A program made the translations under genes and the position numbers. Positions 12,559-44,526 of a stretch of 64,000 bases of DNA are shown here, piece after piece. Positions within the stretch are counted from its first letter, which is position 1, and the number at the start of each line of letters is the position of its first letter. The notes beneath the pieces are model-generated. The model made no database searches, had not been told where the DNA came from, and saw only the letters and a program-made list of their open reading frames with translations. The DNA comes from Mobula hypostoma (taxonomy: Eukaryota). The DNA lies in the NCBI RefSeq assembly GCF_963921235.1, contig NC_086110.1:806001-870000 (forward strand). The letters run 5' to 3'.

Positions 12559-12749
12559 ATTTTTGCCGCACAGCCGGTGTGTACAGTCCAGTTGAGATCT
12601 TCAGAGATGTATATACCGAGGAACTTGAAGCTATTCACCCTGTCAGCTGTTAATCGAGCTTAGCCTGTCTCTGTTCCTCCGGTAATCCACGATCAGATCT
12701 TTTGTTTTATATATTGCTATATGTATTTATTGTTGACCGACTGTGGCAG

Positions 12750-12839
12750 TTACATAGATCTGATGGGAATATTGGCGTATATTTCAAAGTTCAAATATAT
12801 GCAGTTATGTACCGGTGTGTAAAAATATTGAAAATCTAA
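12750..12839 (-). CDS. Candidate terminal cytoplasmic exon 'b' of the IgSF receptor: LDFQYFYTPVHNCIYLNFEIYANIPIRSM* (needs phase-0 entry)
   Basis: Acceptor ccctttttgcag at 12840-41; open to TAA 12750-52; AATAAA at 12726-31 about 20 nt after the stop; same reading frame and stop position as paralogous exon 'a'. Confidence 0.5.
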   Translation of the reverse strand, partial: LDFQYFYTPVHNCIYLNFEIYANIPIRSM

Positions 12840-12911
12840 CTGCAAAAAGGGCACACGAGACAGATTAGAAAGAGGGACAGAATTGATTGAGTTTTCAGAT
12901 ATTAGAGTCAC

Positions 12912-13190
12912 AAAATACTCTGCAGATGCTGCGTTCAAAGCAACACTCACAAGACGCTGGAGGAACTCAGCAGGTTGGGCAGCATCCGTGGGAACGATCA
13001 GTCAACGTTTCGGGCCGGAACCCTTCATCAGGACTGAAGAGGGAAGGGGCAGAGGCCGTATAAAGAAGGTGGAAGGAGGGTGGGAAGGAGAAGGCTGGTA
13101 GGTTCCAGGTGAATAACCAGTAAGGGGAACGATAAATGGGTGGGAAAGGGGAAGCAGGGAGGTGATAGGCAGGAAAAGTGAAGAAGGAAT
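12912..13190 (-). mobile_element. Penelope-like element terminal repeat fragment
   Basis: ctgcagatgctg...ggaactcagcagg...gcagcatc...tttcgggcc...ccttcatcaggact, same family as 29775-30101, which adjoins a GIY-YIG remnant. Confidence 0.82.
12999..13036 (-). ncRNA. Minimal type I hammerhead ribozyme (Penelope-associated)
   Basis: RNA CAGUC-CUGAUGA-AGGGUUCCGGCCC-GAAA-CG-UU/GACUG: perfect 5-bp stem I, catalytic core, stem II GGG/CCC, palindromic ACGU stem III, GUU cleavage triplet. Confidence 0.82.
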
Positions 13191-13213
13191 ATATTGTTGA
13201 CCGACTGTGGCAG

Positions 13214-13308
13214 TTACAGAGATATAATGGCAAGTTTGGCGTATATTTCAAAGGCCACGTGTAAGCAATCATGCCCTGTTGTGTAAAAATAAGAACTTAC
13301 ATAACTAA
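13214..13308 (-). CDS. Candidate cytoplasmic exon 'a' of the IgSF receptor: (V)SYVSSYFYTTGHDCLHVAFEIYAKLAIISL*
   Basis: Acceptor ccctttttgcag at 13309-10; phase 1 matches the TM exon donor; 95 nt open to TAA; contains YxxL (YAKL). Confidence 0.6.
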
Positions 13309-14203
13309 CTGCAAAAAGGGAAGGCTAGTCAGTTTAGAAAGAGGGACAACATTGCTTGAGGCTTCAGATATCAAAGATCAGAAACTATTAACCAAATATT
13401 CAAAATGTGCCAGACAGAAGTGAATGCTATTTTTTTCTGGTACAAATTGTGTCAGTGGTCAGACAATTTAATTACTAATTGCAGAGAATGAAATATTTCG
13501 ACATGTCAAGAGTGACAGAAGAAAAAAAGCAGGAAAGGGACGCAGGAAATAATAATCAGTCAAAATAATTTTCCACGATAGAGGGTAAATGTCGGGTTGT
13601 TTGTGTCCACTATTTGTTTAATTGCATTTATTTATAACTATATGTGGCTACATATCTATGTCGAGAGTCTGCCTTTCTGTCTCGCTTTGTTTCTATCTAT
13701 TTACCAATCTACCAAAGCAAAAACAGAACAGAACCTACCTGTCCTTCAGAATGCACTGCGTTGTCTTCCGAATCTCTTGTACATAATCATGATCATAATT
13801 CCAAATTATCCAATTAATTATTCGCTTTTCAGCATGAAATAATATTTCTGATGGGCAATATTTACATTAATATTTGAAGCAATATTGTAGTACGATATTT
13901 GCTGAATACTGCCATATGTTAAAAACAGAAATTGCTCTTCGATTTGTAATTATGGCGTCTAACATTACCCTCAGCATTTAGCACAGCGTATAATACCCCG
14001 GCCATGCCTCACTTCTCGCTCACTGCTCTCGACAGCATGACAAAATTAAAGGATGGTATTTATATACTGCATTAACTTCACGAACATTTTACTCAGTGTA
14101 GTAAAGGAAGAGGAAGTGGTTTTGACAAGTTTTTTCAACCGAGTATTCCTGGCAGAACACTTTATCTTATACGCTCTCCTTACACCCCCACCCCACCCCC
14201 TTT

Positions 14204-14255
14204 ATCTCTCTCTCTCTCTCTCTCTCTAACACACACACACACACACACACACACA
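14204..14255. repeat. Compound (CT)n(CA)n microsatellite
   Basis: Direct reading. Confidence 0.95.
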
Positions 14256-14309
14256 GACTAACATGCCATAACACGGCGCTGAATTTATGACTATAGGTTT
14301 CAAAATTCA

Positions 14310-14770
14310 GGATTCACGATTCAGGAACGTTTACTGTCATTTCCAGTACACACGTGTAATGGAAAACGGAACAATTGTTACTGTGGCTTCGATGCAGCAC
14401 AAAAAATGCAATAAGCTAAAGAACACTATAATAATATAACAACACCATAACTATAAGTTCATAAGATAGATTGATTGTATGTCGATAGAAAATCGCTTGG
14501 CACAGGACTGTCTGTACATAAGGTGACTAACAGGAAAACATAAAGGTTTCAAAGATTTCAAAGATATATTTAATGTCAGAGAAATATATGCAATATAGTT
14601 TGCAATAAAGTTCTGACGGTTGGAGGTTTGAAGAGGTGCATTAGTGGATGAAGGTGCCGGTCCGGTCTCGCTATTTGCAGAAAGCAACTGCTTTTGAAAA
14701 TGGTGGTGTTAACGTGGATGCTATGCAGACTCTTCCCCATGGCAGTGGGACAAACAATCCATAGGCCGAA
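14310..14770 (-). mobile_element. Old LINE/SINE 3' remnant (Rex1/Babar-like)
   Basis: tttactgtcatttccagtaca and ggaaagcaactgc...ctcttccccatggcag resemble the 3' ends of the other Rex1/Babar copies; heavily diverged. Confidence 0.4.
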
Positions 14771-15166
14771 TGGGTGAAATCCCTCATTATGTTACTGGCT
14801 CCTTACGGCACATTTCTGTAAATAATGTATATCCGGAACCACATGGTGTCAAAACTTGTTCAAATATATCCTGTTAACGAAGTGCCAGATGTAATACATT
14901 TATTCCGGATATATTCAAAGCAGCCAAAAGGGAAGTGATGAGACTGCACGGCAATATATATATATATATTTTTTTTTACCACGCAGGCCAATTATCTAAT
15001 GATATGTTCTGTATATTTTCCTTGCAATATGGGATGTAATCAAGGACTGTGCTAACCTTGCATCAACCTTGGCATTAATTTCATCTAACTTTAACCGAAG
15101 TGCACTTAGCTCACTGAAGAAAACCAAAGCTTGCAATTAACTTGTTATAATGTCATGATTCCTTAC

Positions 15167-15277
15167 CTCTGTATTTTCTTACAAACTTTTGTATTATGAT
15201 TCTTATAAGCAATAGAATGTACAATCCACCGCCAATCGACCGACAAATCTGAACATACCATTGTACATGGTGAATTT
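15167..15277 (-). CDS. Transmembrane exon of the IgSF receptor: EIHHVQWYVQICRSIGGGLYILLLIRIIIQKFVRKYR
   Basis: Acceptor tttccttgcag, donor G|gtaagg, 111 nt, phase 1-1; hydrophobic stretch with Arg and Cys followed by a basic stop-transfer KFVRKYR. Confidence 0.8.
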
Positions 15278-15439
15278 CTGCAAGGAAATGTAACGAATTA
15301 TTGTAGAACAACTTTAATGTGATTGAAAAGTATAATGTCACACTTCTGATCTTTTATTTGGGTATGTGCCTATACGGAAGTTGCTATTATGTCTACAGTT
15401 GTTAGATATTTTACTCGGCATTTCCTCAGACTAAATACC

Positions 15440-15710
15440 TGTTCCCCAGGATGAGGAGTTCCAAATCTCTGGTGCATCACTTTAGAACGATAGAAGGAAG
15501 ATTTAAAATCAAATCTGAATTACTTTTTTTTTTCACACGGAGGGTGGTAGATATATTGAATGATCTGTTAGAGTAGGTAGCTGAGGCAGGTAAAATAGGT
15601 ACACAGAGTGGATGGGACAGCGGGCAACAAAAACAGAAATTCGGAATTAGCTCAGTAATCGACATGGAATGGTTAGGCAGACGTCGTGCATCGGTAGTCT
15701 ATAGCCCTAT
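15440..15710 (+). mobile_element. Decayed CR1 3' fragment in intron
   Basis: ttttttcacacggagggtggtagatatattgaatgatctg matches the FFTQRVV..WN.L region. Confidence 0.65.
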
Positions 15711-15879
15711 GACTGTACAAATAGATTTTTGGTAGGTATCCTCGGGGCATTCATCTTAACCAAGATCATATCCAGTAATTAAATCAGCTTTGATTGCGGC
15801 ATTTGCATGAAAACATAGAGGAAAATGTGTAGCTTACGTCAAATTCAATCAGCGAGATCTGGCTGGACAACTCAAGTGG

Positions 15880-16078
15880 TGTCAAAACAGCATGTCCATA
15901 ACTTACTAACTTTCACAGCGCATCTATGAAATGTATGAGGAACAATATGACCCGGAGGAAACACACGCGGCCACGCGTCAAACGCGGAAACTCGTGACAG
16001 TGGCGGGAATTGATCTGTAGTATTACAGCTGGCGCTCTAAAAGTGTTACGCTTGCCGTAACGCTATCGTGACACCCCT
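15880..16078 (-). mobile_element. tRNA-derived SINE remnant (HE1-like)
   Basis: cccggaggaaacacacgcggccacg...aaactc...gacagtggcgggaattga...gctggcgct...gttacgct resembles the shark/ray HE1 SINE body, recalled from memory. Confidence 0.6.
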
Positions 16079-16294
16079 TTCAGTGCACCACAAATTTATT
16101 GTTTCGTCAAATTAAGATTTTAACTGATTTTGCCTCATCGCTTTCGAATTACAGCCATCCTTTCCAATACAGGCGCAAACATTTTTTAAGATTCTGCCTA
16201 TTACTAACAAGTAGTGCGTCAATGTGTTCCTAATATTCGAAAAAAAAAATTGTTTCAGGAACGTGGCTAATGGTTAATAGAATTCTATATTTAC

Positions 16295-16603
16295 CTCCTG
16301 TAGTCGTTGACATAAATTGGAACTCCTTTGCCGTTTTGATTGTAGGATGACTTGCCTGACAAGTGTAAATAGTCCCGCTCTTGACAGGTTGTACCTCGAC
16401 CAGAATGCTGGTAACTTCATAGAGACCATTTGCGTTTAGCACTTTTATTGTAGTTATACCGTTCCCGACGGTCAGACCATTCTTGCACCAAGTAATATTT
16501 ATCTCACCAGGGTAGAATTCAGGAGTTGTGCATGCAATTGCAAGGGCGATAGATCCATTCTGTTTGGTTTCATTGTAAGTAATTCGTAAGGGGGTCGGTG
16601 GAA
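16295..16603 (-). CDS. Ig C1-set exon of the IgSF receptor (copy A)
   Basis: Acceptor ttgttctgcag, donor G|gtaaat, 309 nt, phase 1-1. VPPTP...IACTTPEFYPGEINITWCKNG...NANGLYEVTSIL...IYTCQASH has the C1 hallmarks CxxxxFYPxxI, WxxNG, YxCxxxH. Confidence 0.93.
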
Positions 16604-17821
16604 CTGCAGAACAAGTTAAATGTTTATTCATAACAGTAATATTTAACCAAAATTGCATAAAATATTTAAATCTATTCTCGGTAAAAGCAAATTGGCATCA
16701 TATACATTTCATCAACTCTGCCACTAATAACATTACTTGGATTCCTGCTTAGTATCTGCGCAGGAAATAAATATTGTTTCCTGATGGGTGGTGAGAAAAT
16801 TGTAAATTAATCAGATTATTTCATTTTAATTTCGATGCCCTGAAATGCTCACATAGATAATAATGGTACCTGTAGGCGGGATCACAAACTTAAAAGAGTT
16901 GGTGGTTCGGATGCTGCAGGGTTATATCAAAGAAGCTGTAACATTGTTAAGAGTAAGGTGGAATTGCCAAATAGGAGGTTTAAGTAATGAAGTAAATGTT
17001 GGAAATGTCCGAGGAAGAATCAGTTTCGATACAATATTTGATGGCATTTGAAAAATGCAATTCTCAGCACGCAGCTAATGGTATTTGGGAGGTTGGGACT
17101 TCTTTTTTACGGTGTTGCATGTATGTTTCAGGAGCAAAATAAATATATGAAGAACGTAAAACTAAACGATGCCCGGCAGATAAGAAAGTCGTAGATTTTC
17201 AAGCACTAGAATGAAGCAGAAATTGTCGTCATTTGAATCCAACATCTAATGTGAGCTGCGAAAAAAAAATTACTCAACATTAACTACTTCAGTTGGTAAA
17301 ACGAAACACAAGCGTCGAACTGTCGGTTACACTGCTCTCTGAATAACCAAGAACACCGAATCATTTTTTGACGGTGTTTCTTTGGAATTTCTTTTAAAAG
17401 TTTGGTGTAAGACATGTTCATGATTTTATTACACCACCATTATTCCAGAAACGAAGAATCAAAAAAGTGAGTTCAAATTTAATTGACCTAAATATTCATG
17501 ATTCGCTTCAGAAGCAAATTTGAATGCGAATTACATTCAGTCATGTATTTAAAATAATCCATAGCGAACCCTATATTGCATTCCTAGCAATTTTGAATTC
17601 ACAATTCAGCTTCCAGCTCTCAGATCAAACACACTGCAGTTACAGAAGAGTGAAATAATAATAAAAAAAATATCCAGAAACACTACAAATGCCAGACAAC
17701 TTATGTGGGAAGAGAATCCAGACCTTTTTTTGTGCTTAAAATGTATGTCGTAATTAAAGCAGAAATCGAAGTGAATTTTCTTTACTTTATTTTGGTATCA
17801 ACTTTAATAACTTCTGCTTAC

Positions 17822-18142
17822 CATGGACCACGAGCTTTGACCCAGTTCCATTTATCAGTGGATTATCTCGACGTTTCAGCCCACAATAATATACTCCCGT
17901 GTCTGCGGCACTGACGTTCATGAGCTGAAAGGTAGCCTCCCCTTTACTCAAAGTAGGGACATATTTCCTGCTGTCCAACCAAGTCTGCAGGAAATTGTTT
18001 CCCCCTAGTTTCCACCAGAAAATATTTAGATCTGAGTTATCTTGGAGGAGTGGGAAAGCACAGTAGAAAGTCACGCTTCCACCAATGATCACGTTGGTGC
18101 TGACAGGAAGTTGCAAAACCTTGTTCGGTACTTCTGCAACGG
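17822..18142 (-). CDS. Ig V-set exon with germline-joined J-like strand (copy A); NKp30/antigen-receptor-like
   Basis: Acceptor tttaccacacag, donor G|gtaagc, 321 nt, phase 1-1. GGSVTFYC, IFWWK, ATFQLMNVSAADTGVYYC, INGTGSKLVV (GxG.KL.V). Confidence 0.93.
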
Positions 18143-18491
18143 CTGTGTGGTAAAGAATGGAAATTAATACATATAGCCGGAGATACACCGTATGTGAATG
18201 AACAATTTAATCTTCAAGCATAAGTACGTGAGAATAGAACTCTTATTTTTTGCACATCATAATATTAACTTATTTGCAAGTTACCGCGTGCTAACAGCCA
18301 AACCACCTATTTGTTTCTAATACTCATTTCAGATTCGTGCCGCTAATTGTATGGCGTCGAATGAAGTGATCGGCAATGAAAATAAATATTTCAAACATAG
18401 ACAATATTAAAGTGATTTTAAGTTTCCAGCGCTGGATAACTTTTCTGTTTACTTTTTGTCCACAAGAGAGATAGGAAAACATACACTTTAC

Positions 18492-18537
18492 CTGGATAAA
18501 TAATATTGAAGATCACTAATAACAATGGAAGATGCAT
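18492..18537 (-). CDS. Leader (signal peptide) exon copy A: MHLPLLLVIFNIIYP
   Basis: aaaATG start, 46 nt, donor G|gtaaag phase 1; joins the V exon to give MHLPLLLVIFNIIYPAVAEVPNK. Confidence 0.85.
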
Positions 18538-19003
18538 TTTTGAAACAGAACTGACAAAATTCGACGTCTTGACACAGCCGTCTGGAATGTTACGACGCAT
18601 GACGCTTAAAGTGTTTTCAACAGTGCGATTGAGTGGCGTGAGGTTAGCGTGAGCATAAAACCAATTGACTCCGGAGTCTTTCGTCCTACGTTTAAGGACG
18701 AAAAAACACACCTTAATAGCAGTTAGTGATACGATTAATGCAGCTTGGTAGTTTAGCCAACGAGAGTCCCTCTGACATTGCCATCATCAGAGGCAATCCA
18801 CAGTATGGTTTCATTCAACGTCATAAGTATTCTTATTTCGGTCGGAAGGGCAGGCATTTTGTCGTCAAACCTATAAGCACAGGGCATCAGATTTGCGACT
18901 TTAATCTGATAGGCTAGAATGGAGCAAAGGTCCGACGATCACTGCAGGATAAACCAAGATATTTTGAAATGATTAACAAAACATACGCTGATCAAGTTGA
19001 AAA

Positions 19004-22942: not shown

Positions 22943-25900
22943 AGAAACATAGAAACATAGAAAATAGGTGCAGGAGTAGGCCATTCGGCCCTTCGAGCCT
23001 GCACCGCCATTTATTATGATCATGGCTGATCATCCAACTCAGAACCCAGCCTTCCCTCCATACCCCCTGACCCCTGTAGCCACAAGGGCCATATCTAACT
23101 TCCTTTTAAACATAGCTAATGAACTGGCCTCAACAGTTTGCTGTGGCAGAGAATTCCACAGATTCACCACTCTCTGTGTGAAGAAGTTTTTCCTAACCTC
23201 GGTCCTAAAAGGCTTCCCCTCTATCCTCAAACTGTGACCCCTCGTTCTAGACCTCCCCAACATCGGGAACAATCTTCCTGCATCTAGCCTGTCCAATCCC
23301 TTTAGGATCTTATACGTTTCAATCAGATCCCCCCTCAATCTTCTAAATTCCAACGAGTACAAGCCCAGTTCATCCAGTCTTTCTTCATATGAAAGACCTG
23401 CCATCCCAGGAATCAATCTGGTGAACCTTCTTTGTACTCCCTCTATGGCAAAGATGTCTTTCCTCAGATTAGGGGACCAAAACTGCACACAATACTCCAG
23501 GTGTGGTCTCACCAAGGCCTTGTACAACTGCAGTAGTACCTCCCTGCTCCTGTACTCGAATCCTCTCGCTATAAATGCCAGCATACCGTTCGCCTTTTTC
23601 ACCGCCTGCTGTACCTGCATGCCCACTTTCAATGACTGGTGTATAATGACACCCAGGTCTCGTTGCACCTCCCCTTTTCCTAATCGGCCACCATTCAGAT
23701 AATAATCTGTTTTCCTATTTTTGCCACCAAAGTGGATAACTTCACATTTATCCACATTAAATTGCATCTGCCATGAGTTTGCCCACTCACCCAACCTATC
23801 CAAGTCACCCTGCATCCTCTTAGCATCCTCCTCACTGCTAACACTGCCACCCAGCTTCGTGTCATCCGCAAACTTGGAGATGCTGCATTTAATTCCCTCA
23901 TCCAAGTCATTAATATATATTGTAAACAACTGGGGTCCTAGCACTGAGCCTTGCGGTACCCCACTAGTCACCGCCTGCCATTCTGAAAAGGTCCCGTTTA
24001 TTCCCACTCTTTGCTTCCTGTCTGCTAACCAATTCTCCACCCACACCAATACCTTACCCCCAATACCGTGTGCTTTAAGTTTGCACACTAATCTCCTATG
24101 TGGGACCTTGTCGAAAGCCTTTTGAAAATCCAAATATACCACATCCACTGGTTCTCCCCTATCCACTCTACTAGTTACATCCTCAAAAAATTCTATGAGA
24201 TTCGTCAGACATGATTTTCCTTTCACAAATCCATGCTGACTTTGTCCGATCATTTCACCGCTTTCCAAATGTGCTGTTATCACATCCTTGATAACTGACT
24301 CCAGCAGTTTCCCCACCACCGACGTTAGGCTAACCGGCCTATAATTCCCCGGTTTCTCTCTCCCTCCTTTTTTAAAAAGTGGGGTTACATTAGCCACCCT
24401 CCAATCCTCAGGAACTAGTCCAGAATCTAACGAGTTTTGAAAAATTATCACTAATGCATCCACTATTTCTTGGGCCACTTCCTTAAGCACTCTGGGATGC
24501 AGACCATCTGGCCCTGGGGATTTATCTGCCTTCAATCCCTTCAATTTACCTAACACCACTTCCCTACTAACATGTATTTCGCTCAGTTCCTCCATCTCAC
24601 TGGACCCTCTGTCCCTTACTATTTCTGGAAGATTATTTATGTCCTCCTTAGTGAAGACAGAACCAAAGTAATTATTCAATTGGTCTGCCATGTCCTTGCT
24701 CCCCATAATCAATTCACCTGTTTCTGTTTGCAGGGGACCTACATTTGTCTTTATCAGTCTTTTCCTTTTTACATATCTATAAAAGCTTTTACAGTCCGTT
24801 TTTATGTTCTCTGCCAGTTTTCTCTCATAATCTTTTTTCCCCTTCCTAATTAAGCCCTTTGTCCTCCTCTGCTGAACTCTGAATTTCTCCCAGTCCTCAG
24901 GTGAGCCACTTTCTCTGGCTAATTTGTATGCTACTTCTTTGGAATTGATACTATCCCTAATTTCTCTTGTCAGCCACGGGTGCACTACCTTCCTTGATTT
25001 ATTCTTTTGCCAAACTGGGATGAACAATTGTTGTAGTTCATCCATGCAACCTTTAAATGCCTGCCATTGCATATCCACCGTCAATCCTTGAAGTGTCATT
25101 TGCCAGTCTATCTTAGCTAATTCATGTCTCATACCTTCAAAGTTACCCCTCTTTAAGTTCAGAACCTTTGTTTCTGAATTAACTACGTCACTCTCCATGT
25201 TAATGAAGAATTCCACCATATTATGGTCACTCTTACCCAAGGGGCCTCTCACGACAAGATCGCTAATTAACCCTTCCTCATTGCTCAAAACCCAGTCCAG
25301 AATAGCCTGCTCTCTAGTCGGTTCCTCGACATGTTGGTTCAAAAAACCATCCCGCATACATTCCAAGAAATCCTCTTCCTCAGCACCTTTACCAATTTGG
25401 TTCACCCAGTCTACATGTAGATTGAAGTCACCCATTATAACTGCTGTTCCTTTATTGCACACATTTCTAATTTCCTGTTTAATACCATCTCCGACCTCAC
25501 TACTACTGTTAGGTGGCCTGTACACAACTCCCACCAGCGTCTTCTGCCCCTTAGTGTTACGCAGCTCTACCCATATCGATTCCACATCTTCCCGGCTTAT
25601 GTCCTTCCTTTCTATTGCGTTAATCTCTTTTTTAACCAGCAACGCCACCCCACCTCCCCTTCCTTCGTGTCTATCCCTCCTGAATATTGAATATCCCTGA
25701 ACGTTGAGCTCCCATCCCTGGTCACCCTGGAGCCATGTCTCTGTGATCCCAACTATATCATAATCATTAATAACAATCTGCACTTTCAATTCATCCACCT
25801 TATTACGAATGCTCCTTGCATTGACACATAAAGCCTTCAGGCACTCTTTTACAACTCTCTTAGCCCTTTTTAATGCTTGCCCTGGATTTGTCGGCCTGCC

Positions 25901-26708
25901 ACTTTTACTTTTCCCCTTTGTACTTTTTGCTTCTACGCTCACTTTACACCCCTCTGTCTCTCTGCACTGGTTCCCATCCCTCTGTTGTGAACTAACCTCC
26001 TCACACCTAGCCGCTTTAATTTGATTCCCACCCCCCAACCATTCTAGTTTAAAGTCTCCTCAGTAGCCCCCGCTAATCTCCCTGCCAGGATATTGGTCCC
26101 CCGAGGATTTAAGTGTAACTCGTCCTTTTTGTACAGGTCACACCTGCGCCAAAAGAGGTCCCAATGATCCAAAAACTTGAATCCCTGCCCCCTGCTCCAA
26201 TCCCTCAGCCACGCATTTATCCTCCACCTCATCGCATTCCTACTCTCACTGTCGCGTGGCACAGGCAGTAATCCCGAGATTACTACCTTTGCGGTCCTTT
26301 TTCTCAACTCCCTTCCTAGCTCCCTATATTCTTCTTTCAGGACCTCATCCCTTTTCCTACCTATGTCATTGGTACCTATATGTACCAGGACCTCTGGCTC
26401 TTCACCCTCCCACTTCAGGATATCTTGGACACGATCAGAAATATCCCGGACCCTGGCACCAGGGAGGCAAACTACCATCCGAGTCTCTGGACTGCGTCCA
26501 CAGAATCGCCTATCTGACCCCCTTACTATCGAGTCCCCTATCACAACTGCCCTCCTCTTCCTTGCCCTACCCTTCTGAGCTACAGGGCCAGATTCTGTGC
26601 CGGAGGCAGGGCCACTGTCGCTTCCCCCGGGTAAGCTGTCCCCCCCAACAGTACTCAAACAGGAGTACCTGTTGTTAAGGGGCACAGCCGCCGGGGTACT
26701 CCCCATCA
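22943..26708 (-). mobile_element. Young CR1 LINE, 5'-truncated in ORF1, ORF2 intact
   Basis: (ATAGAAAC)n tail; empty site gaagtaaatgttgg in unit A, with aaat on both flanks in unit B. Confidence 0.97.
23039..26038 (-). CDS. CR1 ORF2: APE endonuclease + reverse transcriptase, 999 aa open
   Basis: VNARSIRNK, GITETWL, MGDFN, LDWVL, SDH (APE); NYRPVSLTS, YLDFQKAFDKVPH, GVPQGSVLGP, KFADD (RT). True start codon uncertain. Confidence 0.95.
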   Translation of the reverse strand: MGGGNQIKAARCEEVSSQQRDGNQCRETEGCKVSVEAKSTKGKSKSGRPTNPGQALKRAKRVVKECLKALCVNARSIRNKVDELKVQIVINDYDIVGITETWLQGDQGWELNVQGYSIFRRDRHEGRGGGVALLVKKEINAIERKDISREDVESIWVELRNTKGQKTLVGVVYRPPNSSSEVGDGIKQEIRNVCNKGTAVIMGDFNLHVDWVNQIGKGAEEEDFLECMRDGFLNQHVEEPTREQAILDWVLSNEEGLISDLVVRGPLGKSDHNMVEFFINMESDVVNSETKVLNLKRGNFEGMRHELAKIDWQMTLQGLTVDMQWQAFKGCMDELQQLFIPVWQKNKSRKVVHPWLTREIRDSINSKEVAYKLARESGSPEDWEKFRVQQRRTKGLIRKGKKDYERKLAENIKTDCKSFYRYVKRKRLIKTNVGPLQTETGELIMGSKDMADQLNNYFGSVFTKEDINNLPEIVRDRGSSEMEELSEIHVSREVVLGKLKGLKADKSPGPDGLHPRVLKEVAQEIVDALVIIFQNSLDSGLVPEDWRVANVTPLFKKGGREKPGNYRPVSLTSVVGKLLESVIKDVITAHLESGEMIGQSQHGFVKGKSCLTNLIEFFEDVTSRVDRGEPVDVVYLDFQKAFDKVPHRRLVCKLKAHGIGGKVLVWVENWLADRKQRVGINGTFSEWQAVTSGVPQGSVLGPQLFTIYINDLDEGIKCSISKFADDTKLGGSVSSEEDAKRMQGDLDRLGEWANSWQMQFNVDKCEVIHFGGKNRKTDYYLNGGRLGKGEVQRDLGVIIHQSLKVGMQVQQAVKKANGMLAFIARGFEYRSREVLLQLYKALVRPHLEYCVQFWSPNLRKDIFAIEGVQRRFTRLIPGMAGLSYEERLDELGLYSLEFRRLRGDLIETYKILKGLDRLDAGRLFPMLGRSRTRGHSLRIEGKPFRTEVRKNFFTQRVVNLWNSLPQQTVEASSLAMFKRKLDMALVATGVRGYGGKAGF

Positions 26709-26709
26709 A
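26044..26709 (-). CDS. CR1 ORF1 C-terminal part (SGNH/GDSL esterase-like), 5'-truncated
   Basis: VIGDSIVRG, CLPGARVRDI, VHIGTND, DELHLN motifs. Confidence 0.88.
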   Translation of the reverse strand: MMGSTPAAVPLNNRYSCLSTVGGDSLPGGSDSGPASGTESGPVAQKGRARKRRAVVIGDSIVRGSDRRFCGRSPETRMVVCLPGARVRDISDRVQDILKWEGEEPEVLVHIGTNDIGRKRDEVLKEEYRELGRELRKRTAKVVISGLLPVPRDSESRNAMRWRINAWLRDWSRGQGFKFLDHWDLFWRRCDLYKKDELHLNPRGTNILAGRLAGATEETLN

Positions 26710-27790: not shown

Positions 27791-27951
27791 AAAAAAAATA
27801 AAATCCGGAAACACTTAAGAAGACAGACAATTTATGTGGGAATAGAATCCAGATTATTTTTTGGCATAAAATTTAGGTCGTTATTATAAGAGAAATCGAA
27901 GTGAACTTTCTTTACTTTATTTCGGTATAAACTTTAATAATTTCTTCTTAC

Positions 27952-28272
27952 CATGGACCAGGAGTTTTGACCCAGTTCCATTTATTATTGAATGATCTCG
28001 ACGTTTCACCCCACAATAATTTACTCCCGTGTCTGCGACACTGACGTTTATAAGCTGAAAAGAAGCCTTCCCGTTACTCAAAGTAGGGACATATTTCCTG
28101 CTGTCCAGCCAAGTCTGCAGAAAATTGTTTCCCCCTAGTTTCCACCAGACAACATTTAGATCTGAGTTATCTTGGAGGAGTGGGAGAGCGCGGTAGAAAG
28201 TGACGCTTCCACCAATGATCACGTTTAAGCTGACAGGGAGTTGCAAAACCTTGTTCGGTACTTCTGTCACGG
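27952..28272 (-). pseudogene. V exon copy B: open frame but first Cys to Arg (FYR) and YYC to NYC
   Basis: Same 321-nt exon and splice sites as copy A (acceptor 28273-74, donor gtaaga); loss of the B-strand cysteine implies no canonical disulfide. Confidence 0.85.
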
Positions 28273-28633
28273 CTGTGTGGTAAAGAATGGAAATTAATAC
28301 ATATAGCCGTAGATACACAGCATGTGAATGAACAATTTCATCTTCAAGCATAGATACGTGAGAATACAACTTTTATTTTTTGCACATCATAATTTTAACT
28401 TATTTTACCAGTTACCACGTGCTAACAGCCACAACACCTACTTGTTTCTAATAATCATTTCATGTTCGGGGCGTTAATTGTATTGTGTCGAATGACCCTA
28501 ATCCTAATGAAGTGATCGGCAATGAACTACATATTTCAAACATATACAATATTAAAATGGTTTTAAGTTTCCAGCGCTGGATTACTTACTGTTTACTTTT
28601 TCCACAAGAGAGATAGGGAAAAGTACACTTTAC

Positions 28634-28676: not shown

Positions 28677-29308
28677 TTTTGAAACAGAACTGACAAAACT
28701 CGACGTCTTGACACAGCCGTCTGAAATATTACGACGCATGACGGTTAAAGCGTTTTCAGCAGTGCGGTTGATATTAAGAGAGTGGCGTGATGGTAGATTG
28801 AAGATAAAACCAATTGACTCCAGTGTCTTTCATCCTACGTTTAAGGATGTAAAAATACACTTTAAAGACAGTTGGTGATACGATTAGTGCAATTTGGCTG
28901 TTTCGCTAACGTGAGGCCCTGTGCCATTGCCTTCATCAGACGCAGTCCACGGCATGGTTTCATTCAACAGCATAAGTACTCTTATTTCTGACGGAAGGGC
29001 AGGCATTTTAACTTCAAACCTATAAGCATTGGGCATCTAATTTGCGACTTTAATCTGATAGGCTAGAATGGAGCAAATAACTGACGATCACTACAGGCTA
29101 AACCGAGATATTTTGAAATATCTTACGAAACATAGGCTGGTCAGGTTGAGAACCAGAAGAGGAAAGTTGGTTTTAAATAAATGTTTCGCATTCGGTGAGT
29201 TCTATCCAAAAGTGTCCTCATAATAAGCATAAATTGAGAAAATATTACATGCAATAGATATCCATATTAGTTTAATGATATGACAGTAGCAATCTCCCAA
29301 TATATTCT

Positions 29309-30101
29309 TCGTCAGGACTAACTGAAGGAAGAGTGAGTAAGGGATTTGAAAGCTGGAGGGGGAGGGGGAGATGCAAAATGATAGGAGAAGACAGGAGGGG
29401 GAGGGATTGAGCCGAGAGCTGGACAGGTGATAGGCAGAAGGGGATACGAGAGGATCATGGGACAGGAGGTCCGGGAAGAAAGACGGGGGCGGGGGGTGAC
29501 CCAGAGGATGGGCAAGAGGTATATTCAGAGGGACAGAGGGAGAAAAAGGAGAGTAAGAGAAAGAATGTGTGCATAAAAAAGAGTAACAGATGGGGTACGA
29601 GGGGGAGGTGGGGCCTAGCGGAAGTTAGAGAAGTCAATGTTCATGCCATCAGGTTGGAGGCTACCCATACGGAATATAAGGTGTTGTTCCTCCAACCTGA
29701 GTGTGGCTTCATCTTTACAGTAGAGGAGGCCGTGGATAGACATGTCAGAATGGGAATGGGATGTGGAATTAAAATGTGTGGCCTCTGGGTCACCCCACCC
29801 CCCCGTCTTTCTTCCCGGACCTCCTGTCCCATGATCCTCTCGTATCCCCTTCTGCCTATCACCTGTCCAGCTCTCGGCTCCATCCCTCCCCCTCCTGTCT
29901 TCTCCTATCATTTTGCATCTCCCCCTCCCCCTCCAGCTTTCAAATCCCTTACTCACTCTTCATTCAGTTAGTCCTGACGAAGGGTCTCGGCCTGAAACGT
30001 CGACTGCGCCTCTTCCTATAGATGCTGCCTGGCCTGCTGCGTTCACCAGCAACTTTGATGTGTGTTGCTTGAATTTCCAGCATCTGCAGAATTCCTGTTG
30101 T
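29309..30101. mobile_element. Penelope-like element remnant with inverted terminal repeat and 14-bp TSD
   Basis: TSD TCCCAATATATTCT at 29295-308 and 30102-115; empty site at ~19155. Minus-strand GIY-YIG C-terminus HFNSTSHSHSD...EQHLIFRMGSLQPDGMNIDF. 29309-29505 is the reverse complement of ~29775-29980. Confidence 0.92.
29969..30006 (+). ncRNA. Minimal type I hammerhead ribozyme (Penelope-associated)
   Basis: UAGUC-CUGACGA-AGGGUCUCGGCCU-GAAA-CG-UC/GACUG; GUC cleavage triplet. Confidence 0.82.
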
Positions 30102-42802: not shown

Positions 42803-43690
42803 TCAAAATGACTCCAGATCTCTTCCGTTCCACGTCCATACAGCAAAAAGTACCAACACAACCATAATAATTCCATGCGGATGAATGCAAAACGAGTATC
42901 TTCATACTTCTTTTTTCGTAGCAATTTTTTCTGGATCTGCTATAATGTAGCCGAGAGTGGTTCTCTCAGAAATATGATTGAATAAACATTACATTAAGCT
43001 GTGCCATTCTTATTGTTTACAGAGGTTCAACTTTGGTGAATTCAGTCAGAGAATCATACAACGAGATCAGGAGCTTCGGTGGACTCCATTAATGCTGGAC
43101 TAACTATATCAATGTCTTTTTCAGCAGTCTCCCATTGCCTTCGTAAGCATGACATTCCAAGTGATTTTCTATTTTTTTTTTCCATTTTATGATTGCCTTT
43201 GGATCTCATCTGGCTGCTCATTTGCAGCTTTCAAATTCCTCTAAAAACTCTATATTCAAGTTGACACTTTCTGTCTCAAACAATCTACTGTTGATTATCC
43301 CAGTGCCTTCTGCATTGCCGTATCGAGCTTCTTATCACGTTGCAACGAGAATACACACAAAATTAAAGGTAGCATCATTGGAAAAAAAAATAGTCGACGT
43401 TTCGTGCCGATGACGGATCTTAGCCTGCAACGTCACCGGTTTACTCTTCTCTATAGATGCTGCCTGGCCTACTGAGATCCTCCAGCATCTTGTGGGCGTT
43501 GCAATAGACTTCCAGCATCTGGCTGATTTTTTGGTATTTGTGAGAGGACAGGTATAATCCGCTTAATTTATTACTTTTACCATAAACTGTTTGTATATCT
43601 TTGCTGGTGAATTCCAGAAACCGGTGTACCCAATTAATACATGTGTCCCTGTTATTACACGATAATATATGAACATGCAACCACAGTTCC
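42803..43690 (-). pseudogene. Possible decayed C1 + TM exons of a related IgSF receptor
   Basis: After removing the Penelope terminus, KYLSNDATFNFVCILV aligns gap-free with copy-A KVLNANGLYEVTSILV. 42936-42803 reads D-PEKIATKKEV*RYSFCIHPHGIIMVVLVLFAVWTW...*. Many disablements; tentative. Confidence 0.3.
43385..43530. mobile_element. Short Penelope-like terminal fragment with partial hammerhead
   Basis: gtcgacgtttcg (GAAACGUCGAC on minus, no CUGANGA) next to ctatagatgctgcctggcc...tccagcatct. Confidence 0.7.
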
Positions 43691-44526
43691 TCTGTTATTC
43701 CGTCCTTCCTAGTTTCAGAACACATATTCTTTATTATCTGTGCTTAATTGGCCTTCCAAGCTGCATCGTGTCACGTATTTCAGTTTTAATTTTTTTATCT
43801 TACAGTTTATGGCCATCGGTTTGCAACTGCGGAGTACTTTCCGAATTATCGGTCAAAACACTAAATTTTGCATTATCGGTGAATTGCATTGTATTGTAGC
43901 GGGTATTGTTTTCTCCCAGCTCCAGCGATAAACGTTCTGCTGCTGATTTCTGCTACTGTTTGTGTGGAATTTGCATATTTTACCTGTAGATTTCCTCCTT
44001 TCAGAAGGGTTTTCTCTCAAATCCAAAACACTGGAATGTTTAATGTGTCACTCAAAGTAGTTCTGGTATGCAATCGTGGGAAGTTGGTTTGATGTGAGCA
44101 GAATAAAATGAGGTTGGTGTAGGTTTAGTATAATTGAACGATAATGATCGGCGTGGACGCGATGCACTGACTGAACTGTTCTCGTTACCTATGATTCTGT
44201 TGCACCGATGTACTAAACAAGTTTCATTTACTTACATCCAGAACATTAATCATCAGAAACAAATAAATATATTTCCACCAATCCCTTCAGTAAACACTGT
44301 TTATAGTCTTTTACCCGTAAAGAATGTGATTAGCACCTCTGCCTGCCCTGTTACCAAGCTTGATGCGTTCAGTCCTTAAATATTTGTTTCATTTTGATGT
44401 CAATACTTCCTGTGCTGGCAAGCTGACCTGCCTATAGGAAAGATGGGACAGATATGCTTCGAGCCCGGAAAATGTGCCTGCATCATTTGGCTGTGTGGAT
44501 TAATGAATACAACTATCCAGGGTGGC

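What the first reader, a model, noticed from the sequence alone, without database searches (positions are those of the whole stretch)
12999..13036. Sense-strand hammerhead ribozyme in the receptor's 3' UTR / last intron
The motif is on the gene's strand, ~180 nt after the stop of tail a and inside the intron needed for tail b. The Penelope insertion begins where tail b has AATAAA; tail a has AATATA there. Established: Penelope-like elements carry minimal type I hammerheads with a palindromic stem III that cleave as dimers, and rodent Clec2 genes carry a 3' UTR hammerhead that lowers expression. Inference: self-cleavage could destabilise isoform a, set its 3' end, or bias tail choice.
Basis: partly seen in the sequence, partly recalled or inferred. 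Interest (0 to 1): 0.72.

Follow-up and report, generated by a model that had tools for sequence, protein, structure and literature searches.

The report
Penelope retrotransposon hammerhead relic in receptor gene
The motif is a real, intact-looking minimal hammerhead ribozyme, but it is one ordinary copy of the end piece of a very abundant Penelope-like jumping gene that landed beside a devil-ray immune-receptor's last exon, and nothing shows that it cuts or regulates that gene's RNA.

Summary
On the minus strand, 13037→12998, there is a complete minimal type I hammerhead: a 5-6 bp stem I, the CUGAUGA box, one unpaired A, a 4 bp stem II opening with G-C, GAA, a palindromic ACGU in place of helix III, and U17. 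The predicted cut lies between 13004 and 13003.

A strict descriptor finds two such motifs in the window and none in 300 shuffles. The motif sits in a 282-nt, 5'-truncated 3' end of a Penelope-like element (12907-13188). A sister copy at 29.3-30.1 kb carries the same tail directly behind the C-terminus of an RT/GIY-YIG ORF.

The motif is on the receptor gene's strand, 178 nt after the stop codon of "tail a". The gene's V and C1 exons are spliced in RNA contigs.

The regulatory reading has no support:
- There is no partner hammerhead in cis, and the literature reports no detectable cleavage by single motifs of this type.
- No RNA contig covers tail a.
- The family is massively repeated. Earlier scan notes on other DNA of this genome already describe it, quoting more than 80,000 copies.

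One thing is new. The two "tail" copies abut the insert ends within about 2 nt. The exon duplication therefore looks like a ~183-bp target-site duplication made by the insertion itself.

The parts
12998..13037 (-). Minimal type I hammerhead motif. Stem I is 13037-13032 paired with 13003-12998. The CUGAUGA box is 13031-13025 and the unpaired A is 13024. Stem II with its loop is 13023-13012, with G10.1 at 13023 and C11.1 at 13012. G12-A13-A14 are 13011-13009. The ACGU palindrome is 13008-13005. U17 is 13004, and the predicted cut lies between 13004 and 13003.
   Evidence: Sequence read. Descriptor scan with 0/300 shuffles reaching one hit. All four sequence hallmarks listed in PMC4209133 are present.
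12907..13188 (-). 5'-truncated 3' end of a Penelope-like element: 152 nt of pyrimidine-rich 3' UTR, the hammerhead, then a ~92-nt tail ending ...CTGCAG plus 13 nt.
   Evidence: About 76% identity over 123 nt to the copy at 29970-30090, and a match to the copy at 43456-43502. Thousands of contigs pile up on this stretch alone, in RNA and DNA runs of two species.
13189..13380 (-). Copy B of the duplicated ~183-nt segment ('tail a'). It holds the acceptors ...TTTTTGCAG| and ...ACAACAG|, the stop TAA at 13216-13214 and AATATA at 13195-13190.
   Evidence: 82% identity to copy A. No RNA contig lies on 13247-13644.
12725..12906 (-). Copy A of the duplicated segment ('tail b'). It keeps the acceptor ...TTTTTGCAG|, an ORF ending ...EIYANIPIRSM*, and AATAAA at 12731-12726.
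13737..13739 (-). Minus-strand 5' splice site CAG|GTAGGT (exon ends at 13739). It is used in RNA contigs of two runs. Its acceptor was not seen.
   Evidence: X5 record 19 and X10 record 8 both stop matching at 13739 with 0 mismatches. Searches show the sequence.
15167..15277 (-). Transmembrane exon with an Arg in the helix (...GGGLYILLLIRIIIQKF...) and donor AGAG|GTAAGG. RNA contigs also run unspliced across this donor (15196-14781).
16295..18142 (-). V exon (18142-17822) and C1 exon (16603-16295) of the receptor. They show that the gene is on the minus strand and expressed.
   Evidence: Spliced 736-nt RNA contig with 0 mismatches (record 22). Canonical AG/GT at all four borders.
29306..30099 (.). 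Reference copy of the same family: a composite fold-back PLE insertion flanked by an 11-bp target-site duplication, CCCAATATATT. The minus arm has the GIY-YIG ORF C-terminus (29797-29618, stop 29617-29615), about 290 nt of 3' UTR (29614-29326), and the first half of the hammerhead. The plus arm (29790-30099) has a whole hammerhead at 29969-30006 plus the tail.
   Evidence: The ORF fragment matches 187 proteins. One of them, P0010, has RVT_1 (5.6e-19), then GIY-YIG, then this C-terminus. P0109 resembles RVT_1/HTH_animal/DUF8422/GIY-YIG clusters.

Best explanation
The motif is the hammerhead carried near the 3' end of a Penelope-like retrotransposon (PLE). A 5'-truncated, 282-nt copy of that end was reverse-transcribed into the AT-rich site ...AATATATT, just after the poly(A) hexamer of the receptor's last exon, in the gene's orientation.

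The insertion probably also produced a ~183-bp target-site duplication. That duplication copied the last exon, its acceptor, its stop codon and its hexamer to both sides of the insert, giving 'tail a' and 'tail b'.

In its own element the ribozyme is thought to process PLE RNA when two copies pair through the ACGU palindrome. Here it is a lone copy and most likely an inert passenger. Its core is still intact because only about 14 positions must survive, not because the host uses it. Any effect on the gene is more likely to come from the insertion and the exon duplication than from RNA self-cleavage.

Shown: the motif, its family, its strand, the shared insertion in a second species, and expression of the gene. 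Inferred: the long target-site duplication, and the inertness.
For: - Motif and statistics.
- Family membership: homology to the 30-kb and 43-kb copies.
- Physical linkage of the same tail to a GIY-YIG ORF end inside one insertion with its own 11-bp TSD.
- That ORF end belongs to RT+GIY-YIG proteins.
- 5' truncation and adjacent inverted copies are the described PLE insertion habit (PMC8557442; PMC8969392).
- Differences between this hammerhead and the 30-kb one fall only at tolerated places: N7 U/C, loop II, H17 U/C, G-C versus G-U at the stem II base, C-G versus U-G in stem I. This points to selection in the element lineage. The 43-kb copy has core hits (CCGAUGA, GCAA), which shows decay after insertion.
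- Abundance: 3,418 contigs of RNA run X5 and 25,806 of DNA run X6 were laid at 85% likeness, and nearly all the summed depth falls on the insert bins: about 1.3x10^5 on 12849-13047 against about 5 on the exons in X5.
- No cis partner: no other minus-strand hammerhead lies between 12.7 and 29.3 kb.
- The intermolecular helix III is only 4 bp, about -1.7 to -4 kcal/mol. The monomer MFE (-13.0) pairs core nucleotides with the ACGU region.
- Literature: a single min-HHR is inactive and dimers are weak. The anole PLE HHR needs protein, and no RNA-seq ends fall at its cut site.
- Age: both insert junctions are bridged by contigs of a second species at 4-5% divergence (records 24 and 25), while copies A and B differ by 18%. 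At roughly 9% change per lineage, the chance that 14 core bases all survive is about 0.25, so intactness is unremarkable.
- TSD reading: the duplicate boundaries (12907+-1 and 13188+-2) coincide with the insert's 5' junction and with its family-defined 3' end. The target ...AATATATT resembles the 11-bp TSD of the 30-kb insertion and the reported ATT preference.
Against: - Cleavage was not and cannot be tested here.
- PLE-tail RNAs are abundant in the RNA runs, so partners for a dimer in trans, or PLE protein acting as a chaperone, might exist.
- Contigs cannot show RNA ends, so cleavage products would have been missed.
- The core of this copy is fully intact and has the canonical G10.1-C11.1 pair.
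- A 183-bp target-site duplication is far longer than the 11 bp seen at the other insertion in the window. I found no paper that gives PLE TSD ranges.
- An older tandem exon duplication hit exactly at its junction is not excluded.
Confidence: 0.85

Rival explanations
1. One reading: the hammerhead is active in the receptor's pre-mRNA or 3' UTR. It would pair with another PLE-tail RNA in trans or be helped by PLE protein. Cleavage 210 nt after the tail a stop would remove the downstream poly(A) signal (the next AATAAA is tail b's at 12731-12726). That would lower isoform a or shift the choice between tails, much as the Clec2 3' UTR hammerhead does in rodents.
For: - Sense orientation and an intact core with all family hallmarks.
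- No AATAAA or ATTAAA is seen on the minus strand between 13188 and 12732 (reading). A transcript not ending at the weak AATATA would therefore carry the motif in its 3' UTR.
- Abundant family RNA could supply partners.
- The Clec2 precedent (PMC6765202).
- The insertion is retained in two species.
Against: - No partner in cis and a 4-bp trans helix.
- Single motifs of this class are inactive in vitro and dimers are weak.
- No in vivo ends at the cut site of an active anole PLE.
- No RNA contig on tail a, and locus-specific words are missing from RNA runs.
- The used donor at 13739 and the unspliced reads after the TM exon point to other transcript structures.
- A very large family makes sense-strand genic copies a chance expectation.
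- H17 is U where the family's common form has C, through a CpG-to-TpG change (loose-end consensus). By established NUH rules GUU is a poorer site than GUC.
Confidence: 0.06
2. The insertion matters to the gene, but not through catalysis. By duplicating the terminal exon and separating tail a from its native downstream poly(A) region, it created two alternative or competing 3' ends. The hammerhead would be irrelevant.
For: - The duplicates abut the insert.
- Tail a has AATATA and tail b has AATAAA.
- Copy A has lost the second acceptor (CAG to CGG) and the GTAAGT donor. Copy B keeps both.
- A minus-strand donor at 13739 is used upstream of both tails.
Against: - No RNA contig shows either tail in use.
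- Divergence between species over the tails (5.2%) is no lower than nearby non-coding DNA (4.1%), so there is no sign of constraint.
- RNA contigs running unspliced past the TM exon donor would give a short-tailed protein ending ...KYRGKES* without any tail exon.
Confidence: 0.25
3. The motif is a chance match, unrelated to any ribozyme family.
For: Rfam covariance models give no hammerhead hit.
Against: - 0 of 300 shuffles give any hit to the descriptor.
- The motif lies in a repeat family whose other members carry the same motif at the same place.
- Linkage to a PLE ORF.
Confidence: 0.01

Closest known systems
Minimal hammerhead ribozymes (min-HHR) of Penelope-like elements (Cervera & de la Pena 2014, PMC4209133; Lunse, Weinberg & Breaker 2017, cited in PMC6765202)
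   Same: The catalytic boxes match. One nucleotide lies between positions 9 and 10.1. The G10.1-C11.1 pair is present. There is no loop III and 15.2/16.2 are palindromic (ACGU). Helix I is short and open. The motif lies in the terminal region of a PLE and is mostly found as solitary copies from truncated elements.
   Different: Nothing structural differs. Helix II is 4 bp here, against the 6-8 bp described for Schistosoma and Drosophila. H17 is U rather than the family's usual C. The host is a ray, a group the 2014 survey does not name. Cleavage is untested.
Discontinuous hammerhead in the 3' UTR of rodent Clec2 genes (Martick et al. 2008, as summarised in PMC6765202)
   Same: Sense-strand hammerhead downstream of a stop codon and upstream of the next strong poly(A) signal of an immune-receptor-type gene.
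   Different: The Clec2 ribozyme forms a full three-helix fold within one RNA and cleaves in vitro. This one lacks helix III, needs a second copy, is a recent-looking transposon fragment, and has no expression evidence for the isoform that would carry it.
Non-LTR retrozymes / short PLE-derived hammerhead repeats of vertebrates (PMC7229834; bioRxiv 10.64898/2026.07.22.740005)
   Same: PLE-related, hammerhead-bearing, non-coding, dispersed repeats.
   Different: Retrozymes are tandem units with canonical type I hammerheads that give circular RNAs, and they are reported as depleted from introns and exons. This is a single truncated PLE end with a minimal motif, inside a gene.

Membership tests
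PLE minimal hammerhead (min-HHR) | Conserved core C3 U4 G5 A6 N7 G8 A9, G12 A13 A14, A15.1/U16.1, H17 not G | tested here: met
   CUGAUGA ... GAA-A ... U-U on the minus strand, 13031-13004.
PLE minimal hammerhead (min-HHR) | [quoted passage not shown] | tested here: met
   A at 13024, G at 13023 paired with C at 13012. Helix II is GGGU/GCCC with loop UCCG. These features are listed in PMC4209133.
PLE minimal hammerhead (min-HHR) | No loop III, with palindromic 15.2-16.2 so that two copies can build helix III together | tested here: met
   ACGU at 13008-13005. The 4-bp duplex is about -1.7 kcal/mol alone.
PLE minimal hammerhead (min-HHR) | Short open helix I (type I), 4-6 bp | tested here: met
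   UCAGUC/GACUGA, 6 bp.
PLE minimal hammerhead (min-HHR) | Lies in the terminal repeat or 3' region of an element encoding RT plus a GIY-YIG endonuclease | tested here: met
   This copy has no ORF of its own. The sister copy at 29306-29800(-) has the same 3' UTR and hammerhead start about 290 nt behind an ORF end. Homologues of that ORF end carry RVT_1 and GIY-YIG. The GIY-YIG Pfam scores are below the gathering cut-off (17-21 bits against 22.6).
PLE minimal hammerhead (min-HHR) | Family-wide variation that keeps the fold (covariation) | tested here: inconclusive
   Only two intact copies and one decayed copy are in reach. The five or six differences between the intact ones are all at tolerated positions or are G-C/G-U changes, and none is a double compensatory change.
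PLE minimal hammerhead (min-HHR) | Self-cleavage as a dimer | not testable with these tools
   Needs in vitro transcription. Contigs cannot show RNA ends.
Rfam hammerhead families (types I, II, III, HH9, HH10) | Score at or above the gathering threshold of a hammerhead covariance model | tested here: not met
   No hammerhead hit at gathering, or at E<=10 on 1.2 kb or on 66 nt. This is expected, since those models include a helix III that this class lacks. The class was defined with an RNAmotif descriptor.
Host-gene regulatory 3' UTR hammerhead (Clec2 type) | Present in a mature or nascent transcript of the gene, between the stop codon and the poly(A) site in use | tested here: inconclusive
   The position fits on paper. 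However, no RNA contig covers tail a (depth is 0 on 13247-13644 in three runs), and RNA runs lack locus-specific words. Contigs show presence, not absence.
Host-gene regulatory 3' UTR hammerhead (Clec2 type) | Forms a complete active fold within the one transcript | tested here: not met
   No helix III and no second sense copy within at least 16 kb.
Host-gene regulatory 3' UTR hammerhead (Clec2 type) | Conserved between species beyond the neutral rate | tested here: inconclusive
   The insertion is shared with a second species (junction-bridging contigs). The orthologous hammerhead itself is hidden under the pile-up of family copies.

The most novel reading that the evidence does not exclude
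A Penelope-like element insertion made a ~183-bp target-site duplication that copied a whole terminal exon of an immune receptor. This would have created two alternative cytoplasmic tails in one step. The sense-strand hammerhead left between them would then cut the read-through RNA when PLE RNA or protein is abundant, tying tail choice or receptor level to transposon activity.
Probability: 0.03. Interest if true: 0.65.

Novelty: new member of a known kind. Interest (0 to 1): 0.17.

Why it matters
As a ribozyme it matters little. It is one more copy of a motif already catalogued in Penelope-like elements, and the scan has already noted it many times in this same genome. A sense-strand copy in some gene is expected by chance.

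Two things have modest value:
- The report gives a clean negative control for claims that transposon hammerheads regulate host genes. It sets out what would have to be shown: a partner, a transcript and ends at the cut site.
- It gives a concrete, testable case in which a retrotransposon insertion seems to have duplicated a terminal exon through an unusually long target-site duplication. That would be a one-step route to alternative receptor tails.

Tried and rejected
- Rfam at gathering and at E<=10 on 64 kb, 1.2 kb and 66 nt gave no hammerhead hit, only weak chance matches to CRISPR-DR, IFN_gamma and sR28.
- The two other CTGATGA...GAAAC pattern hits (28900-28939 and 44221-44256, both minus) fail the structural descriptor and are taken as chance.
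- Pfam on the 60-aa ORF end itself gave nothing. The link to RT/GIY-YIG had to be made through homologues. Several of these are chimeric gene predictions (GPCR, RecQ5, NYAP fused to the fragment) and were ignored.
- I first read the 43.4-kb copy as an inverted piece plus a truncated motif. The alignment shows a fold-back with a decayed full motif.
- I tried to see where the 13739 donor splices to. Splicing to tail b (acceptor near 12845) is therefore neither shown nor excluded.
- Thermodynamic folding in 161-371 nt contexts gave unstable answers. The motif is in the MFE structure at 161 and 281 nt with ensemble probability about 0.15, and is absent at 371 nt. I gave this no weight.
- Papers giving PLE target-site duplication lengths (Pyatkov 2004, PMC522041) and the dimer-cleavage paper (Lunse 2017, PMC5785218) are not held.
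- No family consensus was built.

Full report
**1. What is there**

Reading the minus strand from 13037 to 12998 gives UCAGUC-CUGAUGA-A-GGGU-UCCG-GCCC-GAA-ACGU-U-GACUGA. In hammerhead numbering:
- The core C3-A9 is present.
- One unpaired A sits between positions 9 and 10.1.
- Helix II has 4 bp and opens with G10.1-C11.1.
- G12-A13-A14 are present.
- A15.1-C15.2-G16.2-U16.1 forms a loop-less palindrome in place of helix III.
- U17 follows.

The scissile bond would lie between 13004 and 13003.

**2. More than chance**

The loose pattern CTGATGA-N(6-30)-GAAAC occurs 3 times against 0.31 expected. A structural descriptor modelled on the published min-HHR descriptor finds exactly two motifs in the window, this one and 29969-30006(+). 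It finds none in 300 dinucleotide-preserving shuffles.

Rfam's hammerhead covariance models do not report the motif at any threshold tried. That is a failed test of membership in those Rfam families. It is also the expected outcome for a motif without helix III, because the class was originally found with an RNAmotif descriptor (PMC4209133).

**3. What it belongs to**

The motif sits in a 282-nt block (12907-13188) that has relatives at 29970-30090 (about 76% identity) and at 43401-43521.

The 29.3-30.1 kb relative settles the identity. The whole block 29306-30099 is bracketed by an 11-bp direct repeat, CCCAATATATT, so it is one insertion.
- Its minus arm reads ...HFNSTSHSHSDMSIHGLLYCKDEATLRLEEQHLIFRMGSLQPDGMNIDFSNFR-stop. 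About 290 nt of pyrimidine-rich sequence follow, then the first half of the hammerhead.
- Its plus arm is an inverted, 98% identical, 5'-truncated copy. It runs through a complete hammerhead and a ~95-nt tail.

The ORF end has no Pfam hit of its own, but it matches 187 library proteins. Among them:
- P0010 has RVT_1 (E 5.6e-19), then a weak GIY-YIG match, then this C-terminus.
- P0004, P0109, P0017, P0047, P0051 and P0137 show the same weak GIY-YIG match just upstream.
- P0109 resembles Atlas clusters carrying RVT_1, HTH_animal, DUF8422 and GIY-YIG.

An RT fused to a C-terminal GIY-YIG nuclease is the architecture of canonical Penelope-like elements (PMC4209133; PMC8557442). Heavy 5' truncation, and an adjacent inverted 5'-truncated copy, are their described insertion habits (PMC8969392).

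The block at 12907-13188 is therefore the last 282 nt of such an element, truncated inside its 3' UTR.

**4. The four hallmarks**

The last three are all met here. The first is only weakly testable. The intact copy at 30 kb differs at N7 (U/C), in loop II, at 11.1 (C/U, giving G-C against G-U), at the outer helix I pair (C-G against U-G) and at H17 (U/C). All of these are tolerated positions. The 43-kb copy has core changes (CCGAUGA, GCAA) and is dead.

**5. Abundance**

Contigs of three RNA runs of the species and one DNA run of a second species were laid on 12650-18600 at 85% likeness. They produced an enormous pile on the insert alone: summed depth of about 1.3x10^5 in RNA run X5 and 9x10^5 in DNA run X6 for 12849-13047. 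The receptor's exons had a depth of about 5.

Earlier notes of this scan on other pieces of the same genome (the lesser devil ray) describe the same family repeatedly. One follow-up quotes more than 80,000 intact-looking motifs. I did not verify that number. Two intact motifs in this 64-kb window are in line with it.

With such density, a sense-strand copy in the last intron or 3' UTR of some gene is expected many times over.

**6. The gene context**

The receptor is on the minus strand and is expressed. One 736-nt RNA contig joins the V exon (18142-17822) to the C1 exon (16603-16295) without a mismatch, and all four borders are canonical.

The TM exon has an Arg in the helix and lies at about 15277-15167, with donor AGAG|GTAAGG.

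- RNA contigs run unspliced across the TM donor (15196-14781). That would give a protein ending KYRGKES-stop.
- Contigs from two runs end their match exactly at 13739, where the minus strand reads CAG|GTAGGT. This is a used donor upstream of both tails.
- The other side of that junction is not listed, so I cannot say whether it joins tail b.
- No RNA contig lies on 13247-13644.
- RNA runs of both species hold only 6-13% of the sampled words of 12727-13380. That level fits shared repeat words rather than this locus.

- The tail a stop is at 13216-13214.
- AATATA lies at 13195-13190.
- The motif starts 178 nt after the stop.
- The next AATAAA is at 12731-12726.

Transcription of tail a and of the motif from this locus is nevertheless unproven. 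Contigs cannot show RNA ends at all.

**7. Would it cut?**

This class lacks helix III and is thought to act only when two copies pair. A single Schistosoma min-HHR showed no detectable cleavage, and dimeric and trimeric constructs cut weakly (PMC4209133; summarised in PMC6765202).

The hammerhead of an active anole PLE cut only when PLE protein was added. It was dispensable for insertion in vitro. No RNA-seq reads began or ended at its cut site (PMC11167929).

At this locus:
- No other minus-strand hammerhead lies between 12.7 and 29.3 kb.
- The intermolecular helix would be 4 bp, about -1.7 to -4 kcal/mol.
- The monomer's lowest-energy fold pairs G5-G8 with the ACGU-U segment.
- H17 is U where the family's common form, seen in the loose-end consensus, has C. 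This is a CpG-to-TpG change, and by the established NUH rule it makes the site poorer.

Abundant PLE-tail RNA could in principle supply partners in trans, so activity is not excluded. I put it at about 6%.

**8. Age and intactness**

Contigs of the second species bridge both junctions of the insert. One covers 12650-12975 with 17 differences. The other covers 13156-14030 with 36 differences. The insertion therefore predates a 4-5% species divergence.

The two flanking copies differ by about 18%. If they arose with the insertion, each lineage has changed by roughly 9%. The chance that about 14 invariant core positions all escaped is then about 0.25. An intact core needs no selection by the host.

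**9. The flanking duplication**

Copy B (13380-13189, "tail a") ends within about 2 nt of the insert's 5' junction. Copy A (12906-12725, "tail b") begins within about 1 nt of the element's canonical 3' end. That end is defined by the 30-kb copy as CTGCAG plus 13 nt.

A pre-existing tandem duplication hit exactly at its junction would be a coincidence of about 1%. A target-site duplication of about 183 bp made by the insertion explains the layout directly.

The target ...AATATATT also resembles the other insertion's TSD and the reported ATT preference of a PLE nuclease.

The length is unusual, and I found no paper that gives the range for PLEs. I hold this reading at roughly 60-65%. If it is right, "tail a", "tail b" and the hammerhead between them are the products of one event. 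The insertion's main legacy for the gene is then a duplicated terminal exon, not a ribozyme.

**10. Verdict**

The proposed regulatory role is unsupported and improbable.

It is a new copy of a known kind in a genome that holds the kind in vast numbers, so interest is low. The long target-site duplication of an exon is the one point worth a cheap comparative check.

Noticed in passing
window 12725-12906 and 13189-13380, with the insert 12907-13188 between them: The two 82%-identical 'tail' copies end within 1-2 nt of the two ends of the Penelope fragment. The exon duplication therefore looks like a ~183-bp target-site duplication made by the insertion. The other PLE insertion in the window has an 11-bp TSD.
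   Followed up: partly
window 29306-30099: Composite fold-back Penelope insertion with an 11-bp TSD (CCCAATATATT). One arm has the GIY-YIG ORF end, the 3' UTR and half a hammerhead. The other arm is a 98% identical inverted copy with a whole hammerhead and tail. It recalls twin-priming inversions of LINE-1.
   Followed up: partly
window 43385-43530: Short fold-back PLE-tail insertion whose hammerhead has decayed (CCGAUGA and GCAA in the core). It is preceded by the reverse complement of the motif's 3' half and a poly(A/T) run.
   Followed up: partly
window 13739 (minus-strand donor) and 13739-14135: RNA contigs of two runs match 13739-14135 without a mismatch and break exactly at a CAG|GTAGGT donor. 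A further 724 nt (X5) or 69 nt (X10) lie elsewhere. This is an exon or retained intron not foreseen in the tail a/tail b model. A 35-nt exon ATTCGG...GGACAG would keep frame from the TM exon into tail b.
   Followed up: partly
window 14781-15196: RNA contigs run unspliced across the TM exon donor (15167/15166). Read through, this gives a short-tailed protein ending ...KYRGKES-stop. With the Arg in the TM helix, that would look like an adaptor-dependent activating receptor. It could also just be pre-mRNA.
   Followed up: no
window 23039-26038 (-) and 26044-26709 (-): An uninterrupted 999-aa LINE ORF2 (endonuclease plus RT), with a 221-aa ORF just upstream on the same strand. This looks like a young, possibly active non-LTR element.
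   Followed up: no
window 27917-28369 (-): A second V-like exon, about 90% identical in protein to the V exon at 17787-18188.
   Followed up: no
window 14242-14639: Another highly repeated element inside the receptor's intron. Contigs pile up in both RNA and DNA runs (depths in the thousands), next to a (GT)n/(GA)n microsatellite at about 14190-14250.
   Followed up: no
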